From sequence record NC_048047.1: a DNA stretch of 64,000 nt, one strand, 5' to 3'. Positions 3 to 27,876 of this stretch are shown one piece after another. A program made the position numbers and the translations under genes. The notes beneath the pieces were generated by a model, which made no database searches, was not told the DNA's origin, and worked only from the letters and a program-made list of their open reading frames with translations. How positions within the stretch are numbered: the stretch's first letter is position 1; every line of letters begins with the position of its first letter.

Positions 3-1880
3 GCCGTCGCGCAGCTTCAATCCACCGCCAAGCTGGAGGTCACGACAGACGCGAACCTGAGCGTCTTTCTGGCCAACCCGCCGGCTGGCGACAACGAACT
101 GCGCTGCAACACCTTCGACATGTGGTTGGAGGTCGAGGAGGACATCAATGTCCGCCACGCCCAGCCACTGGTCTTCGGCACCGCGCCCGAGCCTGAAGGG
201 CAGACGGCCGGCGTCCTGGACGCCTGCGATGTGGAGACCTTCTGTGGTCCCTGCGGCGAAGGCGGCTCGGGCAACGGCGGTGGGGGCGAGTTCGACGGTA
301 CCGGCTTTGACATCATCCTTGGCCCCGTCGCCCAGCAAGGCGATGGCTCCTGGGACGGCGCAGCGCCTCTCAACGATTCTACCCCGGTCTCCGAAGCGAT
401 CGACCGGCTGAACGAAATCCTGGGCCGGCTGGTGCCGAGCGCCCCTCCTGAGTTCCCTAACGGGAGCTTGTCGGTGGCCAACGGCTCGGGTTCTTCGCCG
501 CGACTGGCGTCGGGCGTGCCGGACAATTCCGGCGACACGCCCTACGCGGCCGGCGCGAGCGTGACGCGGATCACCGCCTCGGGCGTGACCAGCTTCACGT
601 TCAACGACGTGGGTCCAGGCAACAGCGGCGCCCTCCAGGTCCTGGTCAACGGCGCGATCGCCGCCACCCGGACGCTGACCGGCGCGGACGAAGGCAACTA
701 CGCCGGCTTGGTCATCGCCGATCAGAAGGACTACCCGCCTTCGACGCCGGGCTTCTACAAGTCGCTCGACGCCACGGCCTCCAACGTCGCCGCGCCCGTC
801 GGCGTCAACAAGTTCCAGATGAAGCACACCGGCGCTGGCCAGACCAACGTCGTCTACTTCGTCCGAGACGCCTTTACCGCCTCGCCTGCGGTCAGTGCTC
901 CGTCCCTGGCGCTTCAGAGCCTGGGCACGCTGGCCTACTCCTCGGGCGTGCCGCACTTCGGGACCGGCGGCCAGCTACTGGTCGGAGCCTCGACCAACAA
1001 CTTCGCGGGTGAGACCTACTACGGTGGGTCTGACCCGTTCAGCGTTTCGGGCTCGGGCGGCATCATGTCCACTCAGAGCTTCGGCTACGCGGCCCTGGGC
1101 CTGACGACGCCGTTCGCGCGCAACACCACCGCGACCGCCGCCCTCACGCCCCAGGTCGTCAGCATCAACGGCTCGGTCCACGGCTCTGGGCAGGTCTCGG
1201 GCACGGCGCGCAACGTCAACGGTTCGGGCTCGGCGCTGCTGTCGACGACCACGATCCTGGTCAAGAACGGCGGGGCCGGCGGACGCATCGACGAGAACGC
1301 CGTCACCGTCTCGGGCCTGGGGTCGAGCCCCAACGGCAATATGGCCGTCCGGGTCAAGCTCGGCGCGGGTGACACGCCCGGCGGCGCCTATCAGGCCTGG
1401 GTCTCGGCCGACCCACTCGACACCTGGGAAGCCGCCGTCGTCGCCGGCGTCCTGGCCCACAACCAGACGGACTATACGGCGGGGGTCCTGCCGCAAGGTC
1501 CAGACTACTCGATCGGGCGCAGTGGCGCCCAGTACGTCACCTTCCTGTTCCAGCGCGCGCCGCTGTCGCAGTTCAAGATCGCCGTCACAGGTGCCTATGC
1601 CGGCTGCTGGACCAAGCTGCCCGGCGTGTCCGACGCCACCCCCAACGCCCCGAACGGCTGGTGGAATGGCTTCAAGGCCTATGACGGCGCCGGCGTCCCC
1701 GGCGAAGCAGGCGACCCCGACGCCGGCTGCGCCACGGGCGCGGTCATGACCGGAGGGTCGGGGACCTTCACCATGACCTTCGGCACCCAGTCCTCCACCA
1801 ACGCGACCGGCAACACGATCCTGGTCCGCTTCAAGCTCAACCCAGGGCAGTCGATCACCGCCCTCTCGTTCACCGCCTAA
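3..1880 (+). CDS. Virion-type structural protein, 5' end outside window; paralogue of the C-terminal part of 1890..4070
   Basis: The frame of ORF 120..1880 is open back to the window edge, with strong GC3 codon bias. It shares long blocks (e.g. GPDYSIGRSGAQY, AGCWTKLPGVS, WWNGFKAYDGAGVPGEAGDP) with the next gene. Confidence 0.8.
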   Translation, partial: AVAQLQSTAKLEVTTDANLSVFLANPPAGDNELRCNTFDMWLEVEEDINVRHAQPLVFGTAPEPEGQTAGVLDACDVETFCGPCGEGGSGNGGGGEFDGTGFDIILGPVAQQGDGSWDGAAPLNDSTPVSEAIDRLNEILGRLVPSAPPEFPNGSLSVANGSGSSPRLASGVPDNSGDTPYAAGASVTRITASGVTSFTFNDVGPGNSGALQVLVNGAIAATRTLTGADEGNYAGLVIADQKDYPPSTPGFYKSLDATASNVAAPVGVNKFQMKHTGAGQTNVVYFVRDAFTASPAVSAPSLALQSLGTLAYSSGVPHFGTGGQLLVGASTNNFAGETYYGGSDPFSVSGSGGIMSTQSFGYAALGLTTPFARNTTATAALTPQVVSINGSVHGSGQVSGTARNVNGSGSALLSTTTILVKNGGAGGRIDENAVTVSGLGSSPNGNMAVRVKLGAGDTPGGAYQAWVSADPLDTWEAAVVAGVLAHNQTDYTAGVLPQGPDYSIGRSGAQYVTFLFQRAPLSQFKIAVTGAYAGCWTKLPGVSDATPNAPNGWWNGFKAYDGAGVPGEAGDPDAGCATGAVMTGGSGTFTMTFGTQSSTNATGNTILVRFKLNPGQSITALSFTA

Positions 1881-1889
1881 GGACAGCCA

Positions 1890-4070
1890 GTGGCCATCAG
1901 TGACAGCGAAAAGGTCGACTTCCTCTGGAAGAAGATCATCTACGGCGCCACCAAGACGGCGAGCCCGGCCAACAAGGCTGGCTCGAACGAAGCCATCCCC
2001 TCGCCGGTGGTGGCCTTCTCCGACTACGTCTGGACGCAGTCGAACTTGATCCCGCTGAGCCCGCCCACCGACAGCACGCCGATCGTGGAGGTCTGGACGG
2101 GTCCTGAGCGGATCAAGATGACCAACGACCCGACGTCGCCGGTCAACCAGTCCTGGCTGGCCACTATTCTGCCCCCGGACCTGACCAGCCGCATCGGTGA
2201 CTTCGTGCCGCCGGCCTTTGGCACCGGCTATGCTGTCAAGGTCTTCATCGGCGACCCTTCGACGGGACCCGCCGCGCGTATCTTCCCCGAGACGACCAAC
2301 GAAGAGTGGGTGTTCGACTACTCGGCCGGCGTCCTCAACTTCCCCAACGCGATTCCCGCGTCCAAGACCGCCACGATCGGGACGGGCACGGTGACCGTGG
2401 GCGCCAACGGCATCTACGTCGAAGGCTTCCAGTACATCGGCAAGACCGGCGGCGGGGCCGGCGAACTCGTCATCGAGAGTGGCTATGACCTGCCCCTGGG
2501 CGAGACGGCGACGGCCGGCGACGGCTCCTGGACCGACGGCGCCATCCCGCTGAGCGACGACACCAAGGTCTCCGAGGCCATCGACCAGTTGAACGAGGTC
2601 CTGGGCCTGCTGGTCCCAGCCCAGCCGCCGGCCTTCCCCAACGCGGCGCTGAGCGTCTCCAACGGCACGGGCAACACCCCGCGTCTGGCCACGGGCGTGA
2701 CCGACAACTCGGGCACCTCGACGATCACCGCCGGCTCGGCCGTCACCCGCATCACCGCCTCGGGCGTCTCGTCCAACACCTATAACGACGTCGGTCCCGG
2801 CAAGGGCGGCAACTTGGCGCTCCAGGTCAATGGCGCGATCGTGGGTCAGCGCGCCCTGGTGGGTACGGGCGACAACGGGACCTACAATGGCCTCGTCATC
2901 GCCGACCAGAAGGATTTCCCAGTCGCCACGCCCGGCTTCTGGAAGTCGATCGACATCTCGGTCAACCTCGCGACCGCTGTCGATGGCGTCAACAGCTTCC
3001 AGCTTCAGCACAGCGGCGCGGGCTCCACCGCCGTCGTCTACTTCGTCAAGGACAACCTGACCGCCGCGCCGGCGCTCTCGACGACCTCGGTCATTGAGCA
3101 GTCGGCCGGGTCGGTCGCCTATTCCTCCTCGGTGCCCCACTACAACACCGGCGCGGCCCTGACCGTCGCCGCCTCGATGAGCAATCTGGCGGGCGAGACC
3201 TACTACGGCGGGACCGACCCGCTGACCATCACCGGCACCAACAGCATCATCGCCGCCCAGACCTTCGACTACACTACCCTGGGCGTGACCACGCCGATCG
3301 CGCGTCAGACCACTACGCCTGTGGCTCTGACCCCGGTCACCGTCCAGATCAACGGCTCCAACGTCCACGCCTCGGGCACCATCCAGGGCTCGGGCAAGAA
3401 CGCGGCGGGTCAGTCGACGGCGGGCAACATGGCCGCCACCATCATCAACGTCAAGCGCGGCAGCGCCGGCGCGCGCATTGACGAGATGAGCATCCCGGTC
3501 TCGGGCCTGGGCTCGCTACCTAACGCCAACAACGCCGTGCGCGTCTCGGCCGGCGCGGGCGACACGCCCACCGGTTCGACCACCGCCTGGAACCCCGCCA
3601 ACGCCCTGGCCAGCCATGAGGCGGCTGTCGTGGGCGGCGCGCTCAAGCACGACCAGACCAACTACTCGATCAATGTGCTGCCGATCGGCCCTGACCTGTC
3701 GGTTGGCCGCAGCGGCGCCCAGTACGCCACCTTCAGCTTCAACCGCTCCGCGCGCTCGGGCTTCAAGATCGTCATCAACGGCGCCTATGCCGGCTGCTGG
3801 GTCAAGCTGCCGGGCGTGTCGACCGCACAACCCAACGCGCCGGGCGGCTGGTGGAACGCCTTCCAGGCCTATGACGGCGCCGGCATCCCCGGCGAAGCTG
3901 GCGACCCCAACGCAGGCTGCGCCACCGGCGCGGTCATGAACGGCGGCGCGGGCACCTTTGCGATCACCTTCGGGACCGAGTCGTCGACCAACGCCACGGG
4001 CAACGAAATCCTCGTCCGCCTCAAGCTGAACCCAGGCCAAACGGTCACGGCGCTCAGCTTCACCAACTAA
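1890..4070 (+). CDS. Virion-type structural protein (726 aa): N module like 4086..4778, C module like 3..1880
   Basis: ORF with GGA-type RBS, Thr/Gly/Ser/Ala-rich beta-type composition and internal paralogy. Confidence 0.85.
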   Translation: MAISDSEKVDFLWKKIIYGATKTASPANKAGSNEAIPSPVVAFSDYVWTQSNLIPLSPPTDSTPIVEVWTGPERIKMTNDPTSPVNQSWLATILPPDLTSRIGDFVPPAFGTGYAVKVFIGDPSTGPAARIFPETTNEEWVFDYSAGVLNFPNAIPASKTATIGTGTVTVGANGIYVEGFQYIGKTGGGAGELVIESGYDLPLGETATAGDGSWTDGAIPLSDDTKVSEAIDQLNEVLGLLVPAQPPAFPNAALSVSNGTGNTPRLATGVTDNSGTSTITAGSAVTRITASGVSSNTYNDVGPGKGGNLALQVNGAIVGQRALVGTGDNGTYNGLVIADQKDFPVATPGFWKSIDISVNLATAVDGVNSFQLQHSGAGSTAVVYFVKDNLTAAPALSTTSVIEQSAGSVAYSSSVPHYNTGAALTVAASMSNLAGETYYGGTDPLTITGTNSIIAAQTFDYTTLGVTTPIARQTTTPVALTPVTVQINGSNVHASGTIQGSGKNAAGQSTAGNMAATIINVKRGSAGARIDEMSIPVSGLGSLPNANNAVRVSAGAGDTPTGSTTAWNPANALASHEAAVVGGALKHDQTNYSINVLPIGPDLSVGRSGAQYATFSFNRSARSGFKIVINGAYAGCWVKLPGVSTAQPNAPGGWWNAFQAYDGAGIPGEAGDPNAGCATGAVMNGGAGTFAITFGTESSTNATGNEILVRLKLNPGQTVTALSFTN

Positions 4071-19545: not shown

Positions 19546-19621
19546 CTTGGCGTAGCGCAGTGGTAGCGCACTCGGTTTGGGACCGAGGGGTCGTGGGTTC
19601 GAATCCTCACCGCCGAGACCA
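19546..19621 (+). tRNA. tRNA-Pro(TGG)
   Basis: ctcgg-tt TGG ga-ccgag; CCA end. Confidence 0.95.
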
Positions 19622-19694
19622 TTTCACCCTCCGCCGGCATTGGCCGGGCGATCCGCGTGCGCCTGGGCGCCGGCGGGGGCGTGTTCTTTGTTGT

Positions 19695-19771
19695 GCCGGT
19701 GTAGCTCAGCCCGGTAGAGCGTCTGCCTCGTAAGCAGGGGGTCCCTGGTTCAAATCCAGGTGTCGGCACCA
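19695..19771 (+). tRNA. tRNA-Thr(CGT)
   Basis: tctgc-ct CGT aa-gcagg; CCA end. Confidence 0.9.
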
Positions 19772-19825
19772 CAAAGAACACGATCGCAAGATCATAGAGA
19801 AGGAACAGACAAGACACAGACTTTC

Positions 19826-19912
19826 GGGCGAGTAGCCGAGTGGTTAAAGGCACCTGACTCTTAATCAGGCGTGAGAAATCCTACGTGGGTTCGAATCCCA
19901 CCTCGCCCTCCA
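19826..19912 (+). tRNA. tRNA-Lys(CTT) with an unusual long variable arm
   Basis: cctga-ct CTT aa-tcagg; 15-nt variable region; T discriminator; CCA end. Confidence 0.85.
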
Positions 19913-19993
19913 TTGATACCCATATTCCCGAGCGGGAAGATGCTGGCCAGGACAGGGGTCCTGGGATGAGAATCTTCCCGCACGGGATCATGG

Positions 19994-20080
19994 GCGGGTG
20001 TGGCGTAGTTGGTAGCCGCGCGAGTTTCAGGTACTCGTGGTCGAAAGGCCGTGGAGGTTCGAATCCTCTCACCCGCACCA
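19994..20080 (+). tRNA. tRNA-Leu(CAG)
   Basis: cgagt-tt CAG gt-actcg; long variable arm; CCA end. Confidence 0.95.
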
Positions 20081-20091
20081 ATCTGACCTGG

Positions 20092-20178
20092 GCCGAGGTG
20101 GCGGAATGGTAGACGCGCCGGCTTCAAGTCCCGTGTGCTCGCAAGAGCGTCCGAGTTCGACTCTCGGCCTCGGCACCA
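20092..20178 (+). tRNA. tRNA-Leu(CAA), weak anticodon stem
   Basis: Leu-type body; ccggc-tt CAA gt-cccgt has only 3 central Watson-Crick pairs. Confidence 0.8.
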
Positions 20179-20220
20179 AGACAGATTGGCGATGGAAAGC
20201 GAAGGTCATGCAAGGACAGG

Positions 20221-20308
20221 GCGGAAGTGGCGTAACGGTAGCCGCGCCAGATTGAGTATCTGGTGATCTGAAAGGGTCGTGGAGGTTCGATTCCTCTCTT
20301 CCGCACCA
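20221..20308 (+). tRNA. tRNA-Leu(GAG)
   Basis: ccaga-tt GAG ta-tctgg; CCA end. Confidence 0.95.
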
Positions 20309-20348
20309 AGTTAAACGAGAAGGAGTATTGAAGAAGTATTTGGTTTGT

Positions 20349-20420
20349 GCTGGAATGGCCTAGCGGTTAAGGCGCTGCATTGTGGATGCAGACACAATGG
20401 TTCGAATCCATTTTCCAGTG
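20349..20420 (+). tRNA. tRNA-His(GTG), no encoded CCA
   Basis: ctgca-tt GTG ga-tgcag; separated from tRNA-Ala by a single C. Confidence 0.85.
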
Positions 20421-20421
20421 C

Positions 20422-20496
20422 GGGGACGTAGCTCAGGGGTAGAGCGCCTGCTTTGCAAGCAGGATGTCGTGGGTTCGAATCCCACCGTCTCCACCA
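20422..20496 (+). tRNA. tRNA-Ala(TGC)
   Basis: G3:U70 pair; cctgc-tt TGC aa-gcagg; CCA end. Confidence 0.95.
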
Positions 20497-20561
20497 GACC
20501 AGGGGACCCAGGTCGCGGCGCCGGATCGGCGACCACCTGGGTCCGTGACAACGAGACGACT

Positions 20562-20655
20562 GGAGGGCTGGCAGAGTCTGGCTGAACGCACCCGATTCGA
20601 AATCGGGCAGGGGCTGAAAGGTCCCTCGGGGGTTCAAATCCCTCGCCCTCCGCCA
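20562..20655 (+). tRNA. tRNA-Ser(CGA)
   Basis: cccga-tt CGA aa-tcggg; long variable arm; GCCA end. Confidence 0.95.
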
Positions 20656-20673
20656 ACACGAGCCGGCATCTAT

Positions 20674-20765
20674 GGAAGGATGGCTGAGTCCGGCTGAAAG
20701 CACCCACCTGGAACGTGGGTAGGCCTTCGCGGGCCTCGGGGGTTCAAATCCCTCTCCTTCCGCCA
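20674..20765 (+). tRNA. tRNA-Ser(GGA)
   Basis: cccac-ct GGA ac-gtggg; long variable arm; GCCA end. Confidence 0.95.
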
Positions 20766-20799
20766 ATACCGAGCCGGCGCGGATCGCCGGCCGAAGCAA

Positions 20800-20889
20800 G
20801 GTGGGTTGACCGAGTGGTAAGGTGCGCGGTTGCTAACCGCAGGTCAGCCTGGAAGGGCTGCGGGGGTTCGATCCCCTCACCCACCGCCA
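20800..20889 (+). tRNA. tRNA-Ser(GCT)
   Basis: gcgg-tt GCT aa-ccgc; long variable arm; GCCA end. Confidence 0.95.
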
Positions 20890-20903
20890 CGCTTCGACGA
20901 TGC

Positions 20904-20980
20904 AGGGGTATAGCTCAACTGGCTAGAGCGGCGGTCTCCAAAACCGCAGGTTGGGGGTTCGAGTCCCTCTGCCCCTGCCA
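20904..20980 (+). tRNA. tRNA-Trp(CCA)
   Basis: gcggt-ct CCA aa-accgc; GCCA end. Confidence 0.95.
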
Positions 20981-21024
20981 ACACCGTTTCATCGATCCAA
21001 GGACCAAAGGAAAGGAGGACACCG

Positions 21025-21255
21025 ATGAGAAACCCCACCATGACCCAATGCCGTATGACGCGAGGCGAGACCGGTGTCCTGATCTCGTGGATTCCGACCG
21101 AGTTCGCCCAGGTCGGCCGCAAGATCGACCTGAAGGAAAAGGACTTCTGGTCGCGTGGCTGGATCGTCGACAAGGTCTGGACCACGATGGACGCCAAGGC
21201 GGTCGCCGAGCGCGGTCATGACTACCGCATCCACCGTCGGGCCACTGACGTCTAA
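21025..21255 (+). CDS. Hypothetical protein (76 aa)
   Basis: AGGAGG RBS and good codon bias. Confidence 0.8.
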   Translation: MRNPTMTQCRMTRGETGVLISWIPTEFAQVGRKIDLKEKDFWSRGWIVDKVWTTMDAKAVAERGHDYRIHRRATDV

Positions 21256-21289
21256 GAGGTTGGCCCTGCCATGTGTAGGCGCCGCAGCG

Positions 21290-21317
21290 GGGCCGCCCAG
21301 GATCACCTGGGCGGCCC
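21290..21317. terminator. 12-bp hairpin between convergent genes
   Basis: GGGCCGCCCAGG-atca-CCTGGGCGGCCC followed by TTGTCGTTTCT. Confidence 0.65.
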
Positions 21318-21326
21318 TTGTCGTTT

Positions 21327-21839
21327 CTAGGCGTGGATCGGCTCGTTGTCGATCACCACGCCCGGAGACGTAGCGATGACGAGCCAATAGCTGCCCGTCC
21401 AGCGAAGTACGGCGACGGCCGGAACGGGCACGTTGGTGCCCAGGGCCTGATACTTGATGACGGATTCATCCAGCGAGATGACGTCTTGGATACCGTCGGC
21501 ATTGGCGTCGACGATCGTCAGCGCGGGGAAGATGAGGCACGGCTTGCCAAGGCCCGCGTCCGCCGAGACGAATGTCGGAGGTTGAATTTGACCAATGGGC
21601 AACGTCGTCACGATGATCGGGAACGAGAGGTTACTGGGATCGGCGTTAGGGTGCCGCTGAATTTGCAGTTCCTGGCCGATACGGTTGCCAGGGTTCAGGG
21701 CCGCGTAGTTCAGATTGAAGTCTGCGTAGCCGGGTTTGGAAAGGCCACTGTGCATCACGACCACCGTTTCCTCACCCGTGGGGTTCAGGATGTCTCCGTC
21801 AAATTGGAGGGTAGCGTTGACCTTCACATTGCGCTGCAT
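21327..21839 (-). CDS. Hypothetical protein (170 aa)
   Basis: AGGAG RBS on the minus strand; codon usage less GC3-biased than the core genes. Confidence 0.75.
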   Translation of the reverse strand: MQRNVKVNATLQFDGDILNPTGEETVVVMHSGLSKPGYADFNLNYAALNPGNRIGQELQIQRHPNADPSNLSFPIIVTTLPIGQIQPPTFVSADAGLGKPCLIFPALTIVDANADGIQDVISLDESVIKYQALGTNVPVPAVAVLRWTGSYWLVIATSPGVVIDNEPIHA

Positions 21840-21952
21840 CGTTTTCTCCTAGCCGGCCCAGCGCCGGCAGCCCCTCCTACCCGAACTGTGTGACAAGTCT
21901 ATCTAAGATCGAGATTTATCCACAACAGCTTTAGCGCGAGTATAGGCACACT

Positions 21953-21980
21953 AAAAAGGGCTCCCGGAGGAGCCCTTTTG
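21953..21980 (-). terminator. Intrinsic terminator ending the large non-coding transcript
   Basis: Minus strand AAAAGGGCTCC-tcc-GGGAGCCCTTTTT. Confidence 0.8.
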
Positions 21981-22818
21981 GGTTTCGAAAGGTTGAGACA
22001 CTAGGCCTTTCACGACGAGACCTCAGGGATTATCCTTATTCAGGTTCCCCTGGGAGTCCAGGAGCCTTTCGGCTTCTCTGTCCCGCCAACGACGGTCATT
22101 TAGGGTCCACCACAGACCGTCCTGTTAAACAACTCAGCCTCTCCGCTCCCATCAAAGGCTGGCCGGCCCTCAAAGGAAGTTTCCTGACACTCACCTCAAG
22201 ACCTTGCGGGGTCCTGCGATGCCCCTGCTAAGCCGAAGCCCAGGGGACGTAGTCGTCTATCGTTCAACAGCGGACCGACTTTCGCTTGTGCTTCGTCAGC
22301 CAATGATGATCGGGGTTGGTTTAAGCCCCGTGCTACCTTCCCTAGTGAAGACGTGCAGTACCTTGGGCTTCGTGGCTTTTGGCCACAAAATACCCTACGC
22401 CTCCGTGTTCCTCAGATCGGAACGGTCCTGGCCGAAAACCCCTCCAGGTGCTTTTCACACCCGACGTGGCTTCCAGATGGACTGGGTCTCGCCCTAAGCC
22501 GGTATCTCTCCGACCTCGAACTGTCGTAGTAGGCTGTCGCCCAGCTACCCCCTACACCTAAATCCTCGCCGACAAGGCCGCCTTGATGTGTCCTCCCGGC
22601 GGATATCACCCCGCACCAGAGCGCCGTTGGGCGCCTTTCGAGACAGAACACGGCCCCTTCGACTATCCTCCACCCCCAGTTTTTACCTGGGTATGAAAGA
22701 CGGGCTGGTTAGGCCCGGTCTTCGATGCCTGCTTGAGTGAGCCCGGTTTCCCAGGTGACGAAGGATAGGGCCTCCGCCTCGTTGCCGAGTTGCCCCGGCC
22801 GCGTCGCTCTCAAGCGAT
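21953..22818 (-). ncRNA. Candidate large (approx. 865 nt) highly structured non-coding RNA, GOLLD-like in size and context
   Basis: Has its own promoter and terminator, no credible ORF, and many tetraloop-capped hairpins; lies beside tRNA arrays. Confidence 0.65.
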
Positions 22819-22824
22819 GACTGG

Positions 22825-22853
22825 GTTGTAGACGGATGATTTTCCGGGGTCAA
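22825..22853 (-). promoter_or_regulatory. Sigma70-type promoter for the large ncRNA
   Basis: Minus strand TTGACC-17 nt-TACAAC. Confidence 0.75.
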
Positions 22854-23291
22854 CAGCCAAATCGAACTTTTTTCGAAAAAGTTTCGATCGGCGTCCCCGT
22901 GACGCGTTTCTTGACCCGCCTTCTTCCTTAGGGCAGAAGGGGTTCCGAGGGCGCCACGCGTAGTGGAAGAATCCGTGCTCCCGCCCAAGGCGAGGCCGTG
23001 CAGCGACACAGTCCTCCACATCAGGCCGACCCTAAGCCGCAGCGCGTCGACTACCCGCATGCCTCGGGCAATAGGCAAATCCCGGTCCGGCGGACATCCC
23101 TCGAAGCTGGAGGAGATAACCGGAGGTTACCGTCCCCGTGGGACGGATGGAATGAAGGGACTTTGTCGATCCCTGGTAGGCCGTCCAGATAGTAGCGCTG
23201 CTGCCTGGGTCCGGGACCGCTCAATCGGCGAAACGCGAAAAGAGCCCGGCTGGTTTCGCGGCTGGCCGGGCTCACTACCCTGGAAATCCCC

Positions 23292-23615
23292 ATGATCGAC
23301 AACACCTTCGTCCTCATCGACGGGCCGCTCTACCTGACGCTGGAAGCGGCTCTGGAGGCGCCCGGTGCGATCTACACCCACGTCAAGAAGGGCGGCATCT
23401 ATCGCCGCATGGGCGAAGCCAAGTACGCGGGCGATGCGGCGGCCGAGACGCTGGAAGGCGTCATGATGGCGGTCTACGAGCATCTCTACCCTCACGAGCA
23501 CTCCTTCTTTGTACGCCCTCAAAGTGAGTTCGTCGAGATTGTGCGGACCAAGCATGGCGAGCACCGCCGTTTCGTCTTCCACACCAACGACATACTCACC
23601 GTCCTCGACACCTGA
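23292..23615 (+). CDS. DUF1653-like hypothetical protein (107 aa)
   Basis: YTHVKKGGIY...AVYEHL...FFVRPQSEF pattern. Confidence 0.7.
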   Translation: MIDNTFVLIDGPLYLTLEAALEAPGAIYTHVKKGGIYRRMGEAKYAGDAAAETLEGVMMAVYEHLYPHEHSFFVRPQSEFVEIVRTKHGEHRRFVFHTNDILTVLDT

Positions 23616-23716
23616 CATGCGTCAAAGCCTTGTCATGCAAGGCGTCACGGTGTCGTCGATCTTGACTTGACACTCGATCTCCGGTAGAAGGCAGACCTGC
23701 TTTCAAGGAAATTGAG

Positions 23717-26077
23717 ATGGCCAAGCCGCTGATCGCGGCGACGAAGCGTCAACGCTTGTCGCCTGCGCATGTACCCCTGATTCCGACGGACATCCTTCTC
23801 GATCGCACCTCGATCCCGGCGGGCAGCCCGGCAGGCACCGTGATCGGCGTTTTGTCGGCCCTGCCCGAGGTGGGCGAGGTCGACTTCGTGCTGCTTGACG
23901 ATGCGGGCGGCAAGTTCGCGATCGCCGGCTCCAATCTGGTCGTGGGACCCACGCCATCCTCTGGCGACACGCTGCCCATCACGGTGCGCGCCATCGCCCG
24001 TTTCTCCAAGCTCTGGTTCGACAAGGTCTTTGGCATCGAGGTGCAGACCGTCGTCGCGCCGATCACGGTCACGCCGACCAATCCCACTATCCTCGAAAAC
24101 AGCGTCGCCGGCACCCAGGTCGCCGCGATTTCCTCGCCGGGCTCGACCCTGGCGCTGACGGACAGCGCCGGCAACCATTTTGCGCTGAACGGCAGCAACC
24201 TCCAGGCCGGCAGCGTTCCGACCGACTACGAGACGGCCACCAGCCACGACGTCGTCATTTCCGCGACCGCCAACGGCGACACCATCTCCAAGACGGTGAC
24301 CGTCCAGGTCATCAACGTCGTCGAGATCACCAACATCACCCTTTCGGCCAGCACCATCGCCGAGAACTCGGCGGCGGGGACCGTCGTGGGCGCTCTGGCC
24401 TCTGTCCCTGCCGGCGCGGCGCTGACCCTGATCAACAACGCCGGCAACCGCTTTGCCATCGACGGCAGCAACCGTCTGGTCGCAGGCAGCGTCGCCACCG
24501 ATTACGAGACCAACACCACCCATGACGTGACGGTGCGCGCCACCAAGGGTCCCGACGTCTACGACAAGACCTTCACGATCACCGTCACCAACGTCAACGA
24601 ATTGACCGACATCACCCTGTCGGCCAACACCATCGTCGAGAACTCGGCGGCCGGCACGGTCGTGGGCAATCTCGCAAGCGTGATCGCCGGCGCCTCGTTC
24701 ACCGTGACGAGCCAAACGCCGTCGGGGACCTACTTCACCGTCAACGGCTCCAACCAACTGGTCGCGGGGGCCACGGCGACCAACTATGAGGCCAACACCT
24801 CCCACTCCGTCACTGTCCAGGCGACGCGTGGGACCGACACCTTCTCCAAGGCCTTCACGATCAACGTCACCAACGTGACCGAGATCACTGACTTCACCTT
24901 GTCGGCCAACACCATCACCGAGGGCGCGGCCCAGACCACCCAGGTGGGCCTCTTCACTTCGACGCCCACGGGCGCGACCTACGCCTTGGCGCCGGGCAAC
25001 ACCGCCGGCACCCTATTCCAGGTTTCGGGCACGGCCCTCCAGGCTGGCGCGACCGCGACCAACTACGAGAACGCCACCAGCCACATCGTGAAGATTCGCG
25101 CCACCCGAGGCGGCGAAACCCTCGACAAGGACTTCACGATCAACGTCACCAACGTGGTCGAACTGAGCGACTTCACGCTGTCGGGCACGTCGATCGACGA
25201 GAACTCCGGCCAAGGCACGGGCGTGGGCACGCTGTCGTCGACCCCCACCGGCGCGACCTACAGCTTCGTGGCTCCCAACAGCAGCGCCGGCAGCCGCTTC
25301 CAGATCAGCGGCAATGCGCTCCAGGCCGGGCCGGTGTCGACCGACTACGAGTCCGCCACCAGCCACGCCATCACCATCCGCGCTTCTCGCGGCGGCGAGA
25401 CGATGGACAAGAACTTCACCATCAACGTCAACGACATCAACGAAGCGCCGCCGCCACCGGACCTGGATAGCTTCACGCTGACCGGCCGCACGATCGCCGA
25501 AAACTCGGGTGCGGGCACGGGTGTAGGCACCTTCTCGTCCAGCCCCTCGGGCGCCAGCTACACCCTGACCAACTCGGCTGGCGGGCGCTTTGCCATCTCT
25601 GGCACGTCCCTGGTCGCCGGCTCCACGCCGACCGACTACGAGACCGCGACTAGCCACACGATTTCCGTGAACGCGACGCGCGGCGCCACCACGCTCAGCG
25701 ACAGCTTCACGATCAACGTGACGGACGTCTCCGAAGGCGGTAGTCCAACCCTGAGCCCGGTGGCCGGTAGCTCCAACGCATCGGGCTTTGGTCTAGGCGC
25801 GGGCAATCAGGCCGTGACCTCTGGCGTGCAGGTCACGATTAACGGCAGCAACAACCCGTACTCGTTCGACTGGGAACTGGTCAGCGGTGATTCGCAAATC
25901 TTCAACGCCACGACCTCCTCGGGCACTACGAACCGAGCAGGCGACGTCGGTTACTGGTACATGGCCATGGGCGACCGCCCAGCCGACCGCAACGCGGTTT
26001 GGCGATGCAAGGTCACCGACTCGTTGGGCAACTACGGGTACACCAACAACGTCAGCGTCCACTGCCAGCAGACTTAA
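23717..26077 (+). CDS. Cadherin-like repeat protein (786 aa)
   Basis: About 6-7 approx. 97-aa repeats with ENS, TDYE/TNYE and NVNE/DINE cadherin Ca-binding-type motifs. Confidence 0.85.
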   Translation: MAKPLIAATKRQRLSPAHVPLIPTDILLDRTSIPAGSPAGTVIGVLSALPEVGEVDFVLLDDAGGKFAIAGSNLVVGPTPSSGDTLPITVRAIARFSKLWFDKVFGIEVQTVVAPITVTPTNPTILENSVAGTQVAAISSPGSTLALTDSAGNHFALNGSNLQAGSVPTDYETATSHDVVISATANGDTISKTVTVQVINVVEITNITLSASTIAENSAAGTVVGALASVPAGAALTLINNAGNRFAIDGSNRLVAGSVATDYETNTTHDVTVRATKGPDVYDKTFTITVTNVNELTDITLSANTIVENSAAGTVVGNLASVIAGASFTVTSQTPSGTYFTVNGSNQLVAGATATNYEANTSHSVTVQATRGTDTFSKAFTINVTNVTEITDFTLSANTITEGAAQTTQVGLFTSTPTGATYALAPGNTAGTLFQVSGTALQAGATATNYENATSHIVKIRATRGGETLDKDFTINVTNVVELSDFTLSGTSIDENSGQGTGVGTLSSTPTGATYSFVAPNSSAGSRFQISGNALQAGPVSTDYESATSHAITIRASRGGETMDKNFTINVNDINEAPPPPDLDSFTLTGRTIAENSGAGTGVGTFSSSPSGASYTLTNSAGGRFAISGTSLVAGSTPTDYETATSHTISVNATRGATTLSDSFTINVTDVSEGGSPTLSPVAGSSNASGFGLGAGNQAVTSGVQVTINGSNNPYSFDWELVSGDSQIFNATTSSGTTNRAGDVGYWYMAMGDRPADRNAVWRCKVTDSLGNYGYTNNVSVHCQQT

Positions 26078-27128: not shown

Positions 27129-27200
27129 GCTTCAGTAGCTCAGCGGTAGAGCGCCTCGGTGACATCGAGGAGGTCGTAGGTTCAAGCCCTACCTGAAGCA
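27129..27200 (+). tRNA. tRNA-Val(GAC), no encoded CCA
   Basis: cctcg-gt GAC at-cgagg; separated from tRNA-Ile by a single C. Confidence 0.9.
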
Positions 27201-27201
27201 C

Positions 27202-27277
27202 GCTAGGTTAGCTCAGTTGGTAGAGCACTCGATCGATAATCGAGATGTCACAGGTTCGAGCCCTGTACCTAGCACCA
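27202..27277 (+). tRNA. tRNA-Ile(GAT), C at position 33
   Basis: ctcga-tc GAT aa-tcgag; CCA end. Confidence 0.9.
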
Positions 27278-27284
27278 GACACTT

Positions 27285-27359
27285 TATACGGTTTAGCGTA
27301 TATTCGAGAAATATACGGTTTAGCGTATAATCCATTAGACAAATACGGAATTCCGTATA
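27285..27359. repeat. Three palindromic TATACG-N6-CGTATA boxes
   Basis: 27285-27302 and 27312-27329 are identical 18-mers; 27342-27359 is AATACG-GAATTC-CGTATA. Confidence 0.85.
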
Positions 27360-27393
27360 TTCGATGAGGTGAAGAACGAGAGGAACAAGATAC

Positions 27394-27468
27394 GGGCCGG
27401 TAGCTCAGTGGTAGAGCGCTGCTGTCACATAGCAGATGTCGAGTGTTCGAGACACTCCCGGCCCACCA
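27394..27468 (+). tRNA. tRNA-Val(CAC)
   Basis: ctgct-gt CAC at-agcag; CCA end. Confidence 0.9.
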
Positions 27469-27473
27469 GTTGT

Positions 27474-27547
27474 TGGGGCATGGTGTAATGGTAGCACATT
27501 GGAGTTTGGTTCCAGGAGTCCAGGTTCGAGTCCTGGTGCCCCAGCCA
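27474..27547 (+). tRNA. tRNA-Gln(TTG)
   Basis: ttgga-gt TTG gt-tccag; GCCA end. Confidence 0.9.
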
Positions 27548-27605
27548 ACTAATGAAGACAACGAGGACTGATGTGACCAGTCCAGTGGAGAAGAGACAGG
27601 TTTGT

Positions 27606-27680
27606 TCCCGAGTAGCTCAGTGGTAGAGCGGCTCGCTGTTAACGAGAAGGTCGCAGGTTCGATCCCTGCCTCGGGAGCCA
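27606..27680 (+). tRNA. tRNA-Asn(GTT)
   Basis: ctcg-ct GTT aa-cgag; GCCA end. Confidence 0.95.
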
Positions 27681-27694
27681 ATACTTTTCCCCAC

Positions 27695-27773
27695 GCCCGG
27701 TTAGCTCAGCGGAATTAAGAGCAACGCCCTACGAAGGCGGAGGTCGGGGGTTCGAATCCCTCACCGGGTGCCA
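27695..27773 (+). tRNA. tRNA-Arg(ACG)
   Basis: cgcc-ct ACG aa-ggcg; GCCA end. Confidence 0.95.
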
Positions 27774-27799
27774 TTTTTACTGATGCAGGTCAAACCTGC

Positions 27800-27876
27800 G
27801 GGGGAGTAGCTCAGCCCGGTAGAGCACGGGATTGAAAATCTCGGTGTCGGCGGTTCAAATCCGCCCTCCCCCACCA
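27800..27876 (+). tRNA. tRNA-Phe(GAA)
   Basis: cggga-tt GAA aa-tctcg; ACCA end. Confidence 0.95.

What the first reader, a model, noticed from the sequence alone, without database searches (positions are those of the whole stretch)
21953..22853. Independently transcribed approx. 865-nt highly structured non-coding RNA between tRNA arrays (GOLLD-like candidate)
Seen in the sequence: a minus-strand promoter TTGACC-17-TACAAC (22853-22825) and a terminator at 21953-21980 bound a region with no credible ORF and atypical codon statistics. It is packed with stems: AGCC-GAAA-GGCT (22063-74), GACGGTC/GACCGTC (22091-22121), CCCCTG..GC-TTCG-GC..CAGGGG (22222-46), CGGGG/CCCCG (22311-30), GTGGC-CAAAA-GCCAC (22372-86), GAC(C)GGGC/GCCCGTC (22699-22720), plus several GAAA/GCAA loops. 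Established: giant ornate RNAs such as GOLLD (about 800 nt) and ROOL occur in phages next to tRNA clusters and have unknown function. Inference: this is such an RNA or a new family. I cannot assign the family from memory of the consensus.
Basis: partly seen in the sequence, partly recalled or inferred. Interest (0 to 1): 0.85.

Follow-up and report, generated by a model that had tools for sequence, protein, structure and literature searches.

The report
GOLLD RNA of a Caulobacter phage
The stretch is a real, separately transcribed, roughly 866-base GOLLD RNA (a giant cage-forming phage RNA of unknown function) in Caulobacter jumbo phage CcrBL9; this copy is already listed in the supplement of a 2025 paper, so it is a correct call but not a discovery.

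Summary
The window is Caulobacter phage CcrBL9. The Rfam GOLLD model (RF02032) matches 21990-22405 on the minus strand over its full length, at E=4.4e-32 and 119 bits. That is below Rfam's 150-bit cut-off, which explains why the default scan and the GenBank record show nothing. Of 98 model pairs, 92 are present and 81 are canonical.

Compensatory changes support both the 3' domain and a roughly 415-nt 5' domain. A model built only from Bertelyvirus sequences finds classic GOLLDs at their annotated 3' ends. The promoter (GTTGAC-N17-CTAnAAC) is conserved in CcrBL9, phiCbK and Brevundimonas phage Bajun. An intrinsic terminator follows the 3' domain.

So this is a divergent GOLLD, not a new family. 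Kretsch et al. 2025 (Supplementary File S3) already lists this exact interval.

New details:
- the full boundaries of the RNA;
- a clade-specific 5' domain;
- a remodelled P20-P21 region in which the two self-kissing loops cannot both be recognised;
- a conserved, unidentified 430-nt non-coding element where sister phages carry a permuted tmRNA.

Function remains inferred: an RNA cage linked to the translation machinery.

The parts
22848..22853 (-). -35 hexamer TTGACC of the GOLLD promoter
   Evidence: Sequence. GTTGAC is invariant in CcrBL9, RB23, phiCbK and Bajun while the spacer varies.
   Evidence: Sequence. Aligned with GCTAGAAC in phiCbK and GCTAAACC in Bajun. It matches the Caulobacter housekeeping -10 consensus GCTANAWC (my recollection of Malakooti et al. 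1995, not checked here).
22406..22822 (-). 5' domain of the GOLLD RNA (about 415 nt; start inferred a few bases after the -10, near 22818-22822)
   Evidence: RNAalifold on four Bertelyviruses gives 22 helices, 16 pairs with compensatory double changes and all helices at least 96% paired. Model R1 of the first 155 nt (22818-22664) hits Bajun at the expected place with 48 bits, E=1.6e-11, and phiCbK weakly. 26 of 48 pairs change on both sides.
21990..22405 (-). 3' domain: full-length match to Rfam GOLLD RF02032
   Evidence: 119.1 bits, E=4.4e-32, model positions 1-416 of 416. 92 of 98 pairs present, 81 canonical, 95 of 131 highly conserved consensus positions identical. Reciprocal model R2 finds seven classic GOLLDs.
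22272..22345 (-). Linker after the first hairpin domain. It contains the small hairpin CGGGG/CCCCG (22330-22311) and the conserved AAGCGAAAGTC (22287-22277)
   Evidence: Aligned to the unpaired A-rich stretch of the Rfam model. phiCbK has tRNA-Gly(UCC) inserted at this place. The hairpin shows C:G to U:A between lineages.
22121..22271 (-). Long-range helix GCUGUUGAAC (22271-22262) with GUUUAACAGG (22130-22121), enclosing the central hairpins
   Evidence: 9 of 10 pairs canonical. Two pairs change on both sides and two on one side between CcrBL9 and RB23 (helix 25).
22140..22190 (-). Remodelled P20-P21 region. One hairpin (22169-22156, loop CGGCCA with palindrome GGCC at 22164-22161) aligns to the first of the two hairpins of the model, and the second is deleted
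   Evidence: 15 model positions deleted and low posterior probabilities. Helices 30-31 are only 56-60% canonical. RNAalifold prefers two adjacent hairpins here. There is no covariation to decide between the two foldings.
21953..21980 (-). Intrinsic terminator: 7-bp G+C stem GGGCUCC/GGAGCCC, loop UCCG, then UUUUU
   Evidence: Sequence. The hairpin is kept with changes in CcrSC, RB23 and BL47. Similarity between lineages falls to 29-38% just downstream (helix 38).

Best explanation
Window 21953 to about 22820, minus strand, encodes a GOLLD-family RNA of about 866 nt belonging to Caulobacter jumbo phage CcrBL9. It is a divergent, G+C-rich representative of the family.

Shown or strongly supported: it is non-coding. 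It has the conserved GOLLD 3' domain. It has a structured 5' domain shared with the GOLLDs of Brevundimonas phage Bajun and, more weakly, phiCbK. It is flanked by a conserved Caulobacter-type promoter and an intrinsic terminator, on the strand opposite to the two tRNA arrays. It therefore looks like a separate transcription unit made by the host RNA polymerase.

Inferred from the solved GOLLD env-38 structure: copies of the RNA associate through loop-loop and A-minor contacts into a hollow multimeric cage, with 5' domains as caps, 3' domains as rings and the linker pointing inwards.

Inferred from context: its role is tied to the phage's translation kit. It sits among tRNA arrays, sister phages have a tmRNA next to it, and phiCbK has a tRNA inside its linker. 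It may hold, protect or present tRNAs or ribosomes during lytic growth. My probabilities: GOLLD identity about 0.95, some homo-oligomeric assembly about 0.55, translation-linked role about 0.35.
For: - Rfam GOLLD match at E=4.4e-32 over the full model.
- 92 of 98 pairs present, 81 canonical.
- Eight pairs of the independently derived Rfam structure change on both sides within Bertelyviruses; overall 24 such pairs against 0-4 in slid controls.
- Model R2, built from Bertelyvirus sequences only, finds Bajun and seven classic GOLLDs exactly at the 3' ends of their Rfam-annotated intervals and nothing in GOLLD-less loci. 22 of 29 pairs covary.
- 5' domain homology and covariation.
- Promoter conserved in three clades, terminator present, fold z-score -3.73.
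- The same interval is listed as GOLLD in Kretsch et al. 2025, Supplementary File S3.
- Cage structure, rise in expression during lysis, tRNAs in linkers and ribosome pull-down are taken from PMC12286853.
Against: - The score is below Rfam's gathering cut-off (119 against 150 bits; classic GOLLDs score 270-327).
- 11 of 92 pairs are non-canonical.
- The P20-P21 region, which in env-38 carries the two self-kissing loops that join the half-shells, is remodelled: one hairpin is missing and an alternative fold exists. A closed 14-mer therefore cannot be assumed.
- The 5' domain model finds nothing in classic GOLLD loci.
- No expression data were examined.
- The function of GOLLD is unknown in any system.
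- The alignments used for searches are fitted to the model and lean towards it.
Confidence: 0.85

Rival explanations
1. It is a GOLLD homologue that does not build the closed 14-mer cage. Because the equatorial kissing-loop region is remodelled, it assembles with another stoichiometry, forms only half-shells, or works as a monomer or with proteins.
For: One of the two hairpins of the P21 region is deleted and the rest fits the consensus poorly. RNAalifold prefers two different hairpins there, and all four variable columns are unpaired in that version. The 5' cap domain is clade-specific.
Against: The rest of the 3' domain, including the loops aligned to L14, L20, L22, L26 and L27, is well conserved. 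The retained hairpin loop carries a GGCC palindrome that could still self-pair. This is untested.
Confidence: 0.3
2. It is a decaying, functionless remnant of a GOLLD gene.
For: Low score relative to classic GOLLDs. GOLLD is absent from the corresponding tRNA-Cys/tmRNA locus in related phages (Poindextervirus, CcrColossus, Brevundimonas jumbo phages), so loss occurs.
Against: Pairing is maintained by compensatory changes in both domains, the promoter hexamers are invariant while the spacer drifts, and similarity collapses to 29-38% right after the terminator.
Confidence: 0.04
3. It is a long structured leader or regulatory RNA of the co-oriented downstream gene gp550 (21839-21327).
For: Same strand, 114 nt apart.
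Against: A strong terminator lies between them. The downstream gene and spacer are not conserved between Bertelyvirus lineages, while the RNA is. In phiCbK and Bajun the downstream neighbour is tRNA-Cys instead.
Confidence: 0.03
4. It is a new RNA family unrelated to GOLLD, or unannotated protein-coding sequence.
For: No hit at Rfam gathering thresholds. Single-sequence nhmmer does not link it to classic GOLLDs. Several ORFs of 58-131 aa overlap it.
Against: Full-length covariance-model match at E=4.4e-32 and a reciprocal model search. Nine frame-breaking indels between lineages and compensatory pair changes.
Confidence: 0.01

Closest known systems
GOLLD RNA (Rfam RF02032; env-38 cryo-EM structure, Kretsch et al. 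2025)
   Same: Full-length 3' domain match, long-range helix, conserved loop motifs (CAAAAG, CGCAA, CCUAA, GGGGAA...AUAAUCC, UCUCA), variable linker, about 420-nt 5' domain, more than 800 nt in total, phage-encoded beside tRNA arrays.
   Different: 59% G+C and only 119 bits against 270-327 for classic members. The second hairpin of the P21 region is deleted and the region is possibly refolded. The 5' domain is not detectable in classic GOLLD loci with a clade model. It lies on the strand opposite to the tRNAs.
GOLLD of Caulobacter phage phiCbK and of Brevundimonas phage vB_BgoS-Bajun (same subfamily, Dolichocephalovirinae)
   Same: Same promoter, same 5' start TCATCGCUU, homologous first 155 nt of the 5' domain, same 3' domain.
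   Different: phiCbK carries tRNA-Gly(UCC) inside the linker and passes the Rfam cut-off (165 bits). Both have a permuted tmRNA divergently upstream and tRNA-Cys downstream. CcrBL9 has a short hairpin in the linker, an unidentified conserved element instead of the tmRNA, and its own terminator.
ROOL RNA (Rfam RF03087)
   Same: Large ornate phage RNA near tRNA islands that forms an RNA-only cage.
   Different: No match to any family other than GOLLD at E up to 10 in 21000-24000. Sequence and secondary structure are unrelated.

Membership tests
GOLLD RNA (RF02032) | Statistically significant, full-length match to the family covariance model | tested here: met
   E=4.4e-32, model 1-416 of 416, minus strand 22405-21990.
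GOLLD RNA (RF02032) | Score at or above Rfam's curated gathering cut-off of 150 bits (an operational threshold, not a structural feature) | tested here: not met
   119.1 bits, so there is no hit in the default scan. Sister phiCbK scores 165.3, Bajun 104, classic members 270-327.
GOLLD RNA (RF02032) | Conserved helices of the 3' domain, kept by compensatory changes | tested here: met
   92 of 98 pairs present, 81 canonical. Eight Rfam-defined pairs change on both sides within Bertelyviruses. 22 of 29 pairs of the last 131 nt covary across 11 sequences, with 91.6% paired against 31-51% when slid (that alignment is fitted to the model).
GOLLD RNA (RF02032) | Long-range helix closing the central multi-hairpin region | tested here: met
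   22271-22262 with 22130-22121. 9 of 10 pairs, with two double and two single compensatory changes.
GOLLD RNA (RF02032) | Highly conserved sequence motifs of the 3' domain | tested here: met
   95 of 131 upper-case consensus positions identical.
GOLLD RNA (RF02032) | Two-domain RNA of more than 800 nt with a less conserved, structured 5' half and a variable linker | tested here: met
   866 nt from promoter to terminator. 5' domain with covariation. 74-nt linker. The literature definition is in PMC12286853.
GOLLD RNA (RF02032) | Encoded by phages or prophages, often beside tRNA islands | tested here: met
   CcrBL9 genome. tRNA arrays at 19546-20980 and 27129-27876.
GOLLD RNA (RF02032) | Two self-complementary kissing loops (L21a, L21b) that join the half-shells in env-38 | tested here: inconclusive
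   One hairpin aligns to the L21a position with loop CGGCCA, and the L21b hairpin is deleted. An alternative fold is preferred by RNAalifold and no covariation decides. My mapping of paper names to model positions is inferred from the residue numbers in the text.
GOLLD RNA (RF02032) | Self-assembly into a 14-mer cage; expression rising in lytic growth | not testable with these tools
   Needs transcript biophysics and infection RNA-seq.
ROOL RNA (RF03087) | Match to the ROOL covariance model | tested here: not met
   Not among matches up to E=10.
Permuted (two-piece) tmRNA, considered for the neighbouring element 22856-23290 | tRNA-like acceptor and T-arm pieces plus a tag reading frame; match to the tmRNA models | tested here: not met
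   ARAGORN finds nothing at default, reduced or 80% thresholds. No Rfam tmRNA match at E up to 10. blastn with the phiCbK tmRNA finds no Bertelyvirus. The same tools find the tmRNA of phiCbK and Bajun.

The most novel reading that the evidence does not exclude
The Bertelyvirus RNA may represent a structurally distinct GOLLD subclass. It has a clade-specific cap domain and a rebuilt equatorial region without the usual pair of self-kissing loops, so it may assemble into a cage of different geometry or stoichiometry. It may also work together with the adjacent, equally conserved 430-nt non-coding element that occupies the place of the permuted tmRNA of sister phages. That element could be a new phage RNA, or a tmRNA derivative beyond recognition.
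Probability: 0.25. Interest if true: 0.55.

Novelty: already known. Interest (0 to 1): 0.3.

Why it matters
GOLLD is one of the largest bacterial and phage RNAs still lacking a known function. Its cage structure was solved only in 2025, on a metagenomic sequence with no host.

Copies in phages of Caulobacter crescentus, a leading genetic model, offer a tractable system. They also come as a natural series:
- with a tRNA in the linker (phiCbK);
- without one (Bertelyviruses);
- absent from the corresponding locus (CcrRogue, CcrBL10, CcrColossus).

The full boundaries, promoter and 5' domain given here are what one needs to delete, express or fold the RNA. As a discovery it is modest. The family is known, and this interval is already in a published supplementary alignment, although the GenBank and RefSeq records still show an empty gap.

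Tried and rejected
- The Rfam gathering scan of the whole window gave only 23 tRNAs. The hit appears only in E-value mode.
- The generic sigma-70 and terminator scanner missed both signals.
- My first DNA pattern for homologues was too narrow and found only CcrBL9 and CcrSC. The second pattern returned 117 IMG/VR loci, a mix of classic GOLLDs and chance matches.
- Single-sequence nhmmer with either domain, or with the upstream element, found only Bertelyviruses, so sequence alone does not link this RNA to classic GOLLDs.
- A MAFFT alignment of the 5' domains of three clades was too poor beyond the first ~100 nt: only 17-22 of 36 pairs were kept. It was replaced by a covariance-model alignment.
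- The 5' domain model found nothing in 100 IMG/VR loci.
- I tested whether the upstream conserved element is a tmRNA and rejected it. I tested it as coding and rejected it: no codon periodicity and frame-breaking indels. Its structure is only weakly supported on either strand.
- Morgado et al. 2020 on Mycobacterium GOLLD could not be read.
- Pfam on the neighbouring genes gave only DUF1653 for gp549.

Full report
**Source and context.** The 921 bases around the finding are 100% identical to Caulobacter phage CcrBL9 (NC_048047, 322 kb, genus Bertelyvirus). Record coordinate equals window coordinate plus 62000. In the record, the 1.45 kb between gp549 (window 23292-23615, plus strand) and gp550 (21327-21839, minus strand) carries no annotation. 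ARAGORN and Rfam find 23 tRNA genes, all on the plus strand. They include arrays at 19546-20980 and 27129-27876 on either side of the finding.

**Observation.**
- TTGACC at 22853-22848, a 17-nt spacer, and TACAAC at 22830-22825.
- A terminator with a 7-bp G+C stem, a UCCG loop and five U at 21980-21953.
- The six stems.

The 866-nt minus-strand sequence folds with z = -3.73 (none of 20 shuffles as stable). Its complement reaches only -1.47. ORFs of 58-131 aa overlap the region. However, the two Bertelyvirus lineages differ within the RNA by nine indels of 1 or 2 nt, so none can be a conserved gene.

**Identity.** At gathering thresholds Rfam reports nothing here. In E-value mode the GOLLD model RF02032 matches 22405-21990 on the minus strand over all 416 model positions, with 119.1 bits and E=4.4e-32. 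The next best hit in the 3 kb has E=0.44. Mapping the model's structure onto the sequence gives 92 of 98 pairs present, 81 of them canonical, and 95 of 131 highly conserved consensus positions identical. One hairpin of the model is deleted. Classic GOLLDs from IMG/VR score 270-327 bits, so this is a distant member. Single-sequence nhmmer does not connect it to them at all.

As a reciprocal test I built a model (R2) from the last 131 nt of three Bertelyvirus sequences with the Rfam-derived structure.
- It finds Bajun and seven classic GOLLDs, each exactly at the 3' end of its Rfam-annotated interval.
- It finds nothing in two GOLLD-less control loci.
- On that alignment 22 of 29 pairs change on both sides, and 91.6% of cells are paired against 31-51% when partners are slid.
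- The alignment is fitted to the model, which inflates such numbers.

**Covariation within the genus.** blastn finds the RNA in all 11 Bertelyvirus records: CcrSC at 96%, and the RB23/C1/C2/J4/BL47 group at 83%. I tested a combined structure on an alignment of four of them: Rfam for the 3' domain, RNAalifold for the 5' domain and the terminator.
- 94.5% of cells are paired.
- 24 pairs change on both sides, against 0-4 in slid controls.
- Eight of those pairs lie in the Rfam-defined 3' domain, whose structure was not derived from these sequences.
- They include two pairs in the long-range helix 22271-22262 / 22130-22121.
- The 5' domain structure was derived from the same alignment, so its numbers are less independent.

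[quoted passage not shown] Here 415 nt lie between the promoter and the 3' domain.

Kretsch et al. list GOLLD hits in phiCbK-like phages and in Brevundimonas phage Bajun. I fetched both. phiCbK scores 165.3 bits and Bajun 104. Aligning the upstream parts shows GTTGAC, a spacer of the same length but variable sequence, CTAnAAC, and then the RNA start TCATCGCTT, conserved in all three clades. The -10 (GCTAGAAC in phiCbK, TCTACAAC here) fits the Caulobacter housekeeping consensus GCTANAWC as I recall it from Malakooti et al. 1995. I did not check that here.

A model (R1) of the first 155 nt, built from Bertelyviruses only, hits Bajun at the expected position (48.1 bits, E=1.6e-11) and phiCbK weakly (14.3 bits, E about 0.01, right position). 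In the resulting alignment 26 of 48 pairs change on both sides. R1 finds nothing in 100 IMG/VR loci that include verified classic GOLLDs. So this 5' domain is specific to the clade at this sensitivity.

Downstream of the terminator, similarity between the lineages falls to 29-38%, which marks the 3' end of the conserved unit.

**What differs from the solved GOLLD.** In env-38 the two half-shells are joined by two self-interacting kissing loops (L21a, L21b) and an A-minor contact. From the residue numbers in that text I place L21a at model positions about 237-241 and L21b at about 254-258. This is my inference.

In CcrBL9 the second hairpin is deleted. The first aligns to a hairpin whose loop CGGCCA contains the palindrome GGCC (22164-22161). 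The enclosing helices are only 56-60% canonical. RNAalifold prefers two different adjacent hairpins there, and all four variable columns fall in its unpaired positions. I cannot decide between the two foldings. Either way, the contacts that close the cage in env-38 are not both recognisable.

The linker (22345-22272), disordered and pointing into the cage in env-38, holds only a small hairpin here. phiCbK has tRNA-Gly(UCC) inserted at that place, as the paper notes for some GOLLDs.

**Mechanism.**
- Shown: a conserved, structured, non-coding GOLLD homologue with its own promoter-like and terminator signals.
- Inferred by homology: self-assembly into a hollow multimer, with 5' domains as caps and 3' domains as rings.
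- Inferred from context: a role linked to translation. The RNA lies between tRNA arrays. In phiCbK and Bajun a permuted tmRNA is its divergent neighbour and tRNA-Cys follows it. Two unrelated classic GOLLD loci also hold a tmRNA within 1-2 kb. The literature reports ribosome pull-down and a rise during lysis.
- No function has been shown for GOLLD in any system.

**Novelty.** No paper in the library combines GOLLD with Caulobacter phages in its text. However, Supplementary File S3 of Kretsch et al. 2025 lists NC_048047.1:c84405-83990, which is exactly window 22405-21990. It also lists the other Bertelyviruses, phiCbK-like phages and Bajun. The instance is therefore already on record as a GOLLD hit. 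New here are the full transcript boundaries, the 5' domain, the remodelled P20-P21 region, and the locus comparison.

**Locus comparison.** CcrRogue and CcrBL10 keep tRNA-Cys, tmRNA and tRNA-Met but leave only about 280 nt between tRNA-Cys and the tmRNA, too little for a GOLLD there. CcrColossus and the Brevundimonas jumbo phages have the three genes on one strand, and no GOLLD was detected in those loci. In Bertelyviruses, the spot where phiCbK and Bajun have the tmRNA is occupied by a 430-nt element (22856-23290).
- It is 86% identical between lineages.
- It is non-coding by indels and by lack of codon periodicity.
- It is confined to Bertelyviruses by blastn.
- No tmRNA tool or Rfam family recognises it.

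Noticed in passing
window 22856-23290: A conserved non-coding element of about 430 nt lies directly upstream of the GOLLD promoter, at the position where phiCbK and Bajun carry a divergently transcribed permuted tmRNA. It is 86% identical between Bertelyvirus lineages, has frame-breaking indels and no codon periodicity. It is not a tmRNA by ARAGORN (even at 80% thresholds) or Rfam, and blastn finds it only in Bertelyviruses. Covariation support is weak on both strands. A plus-strand promoter-like TTGACC lies at 22911, with conserved hexamers and a variable spacer.
   Followed up: partly
window 19826-19912 (+): The gene annotated tRNA-Lys(CUU) is 87 nt, with a 16-nt variable arm, a tRNA-Ser-like D-arm and discriminator U73. 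It is a class II body with a lysine anticodon. It is 100% identical in all 11 Bertelyvirus records although the nearby GOLLD region is only about 83% identical between the lineages. The nearest relatives outside are annotated tRNA-Ser in Rhizobium phages (85%). Which amino acid it carries is open.
   Followed up: partly
window 23242-23273: A 9-bp G+C hairpin followed by CUUUU on the minus strand looks like a terminator. It ends about 20 nt before the start codon of plus-strand gp549 (DUF1653). No minus-strand gene upstream is annotated that it would terminate.
   Followed up: no
window 22861-22890: An A+T-rich near-palindrome ATCGAAACTTTTTCGAAAAAAGTTCGAT lies between the GOLLD -35 and the upstream element and is nearly invariant in the genus. 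It could be an UP-element-like tract or a protein binding site shared by two divergent promoters.
   Followed up: no
window 22485-22493 and 22014-22022: Nine-nucleotide complementarity between GGCGAGACC in the 5' domain and GGUCUCGUC, the 3' strand of a conserved 3'-domain helix. RNAalifold pairs them instead of the Rfam partner. They are invariant in four phages, so this is untested. It could be chance or an inter-domain or inter-molecular contact.
   Followed up: no
L125 (phiCbK JX163858) 1125-2848; L126 (Bajun ON529858) 1570-3339: A conserved module in sister phages: permuted tmRNA, then a divergent GOLLD, then tRNA-Cys. phiCbK has tRNA-Gly(UCC) embedded in the GOLLD linker. The tmRNA and GOLLD are unannotated in the phiCbK record.
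   Followed up: yes
L098 535-1861; L047 2717-4887 (IMG/VR contigs): Two classic low-G+C GOLLD loci also have a standard tmRNA gene within 1-2 kb. This suggests a recurrent GOLLD-tmRNA-tRNA neighbourhood in unrelated phages.
   Followed up: no
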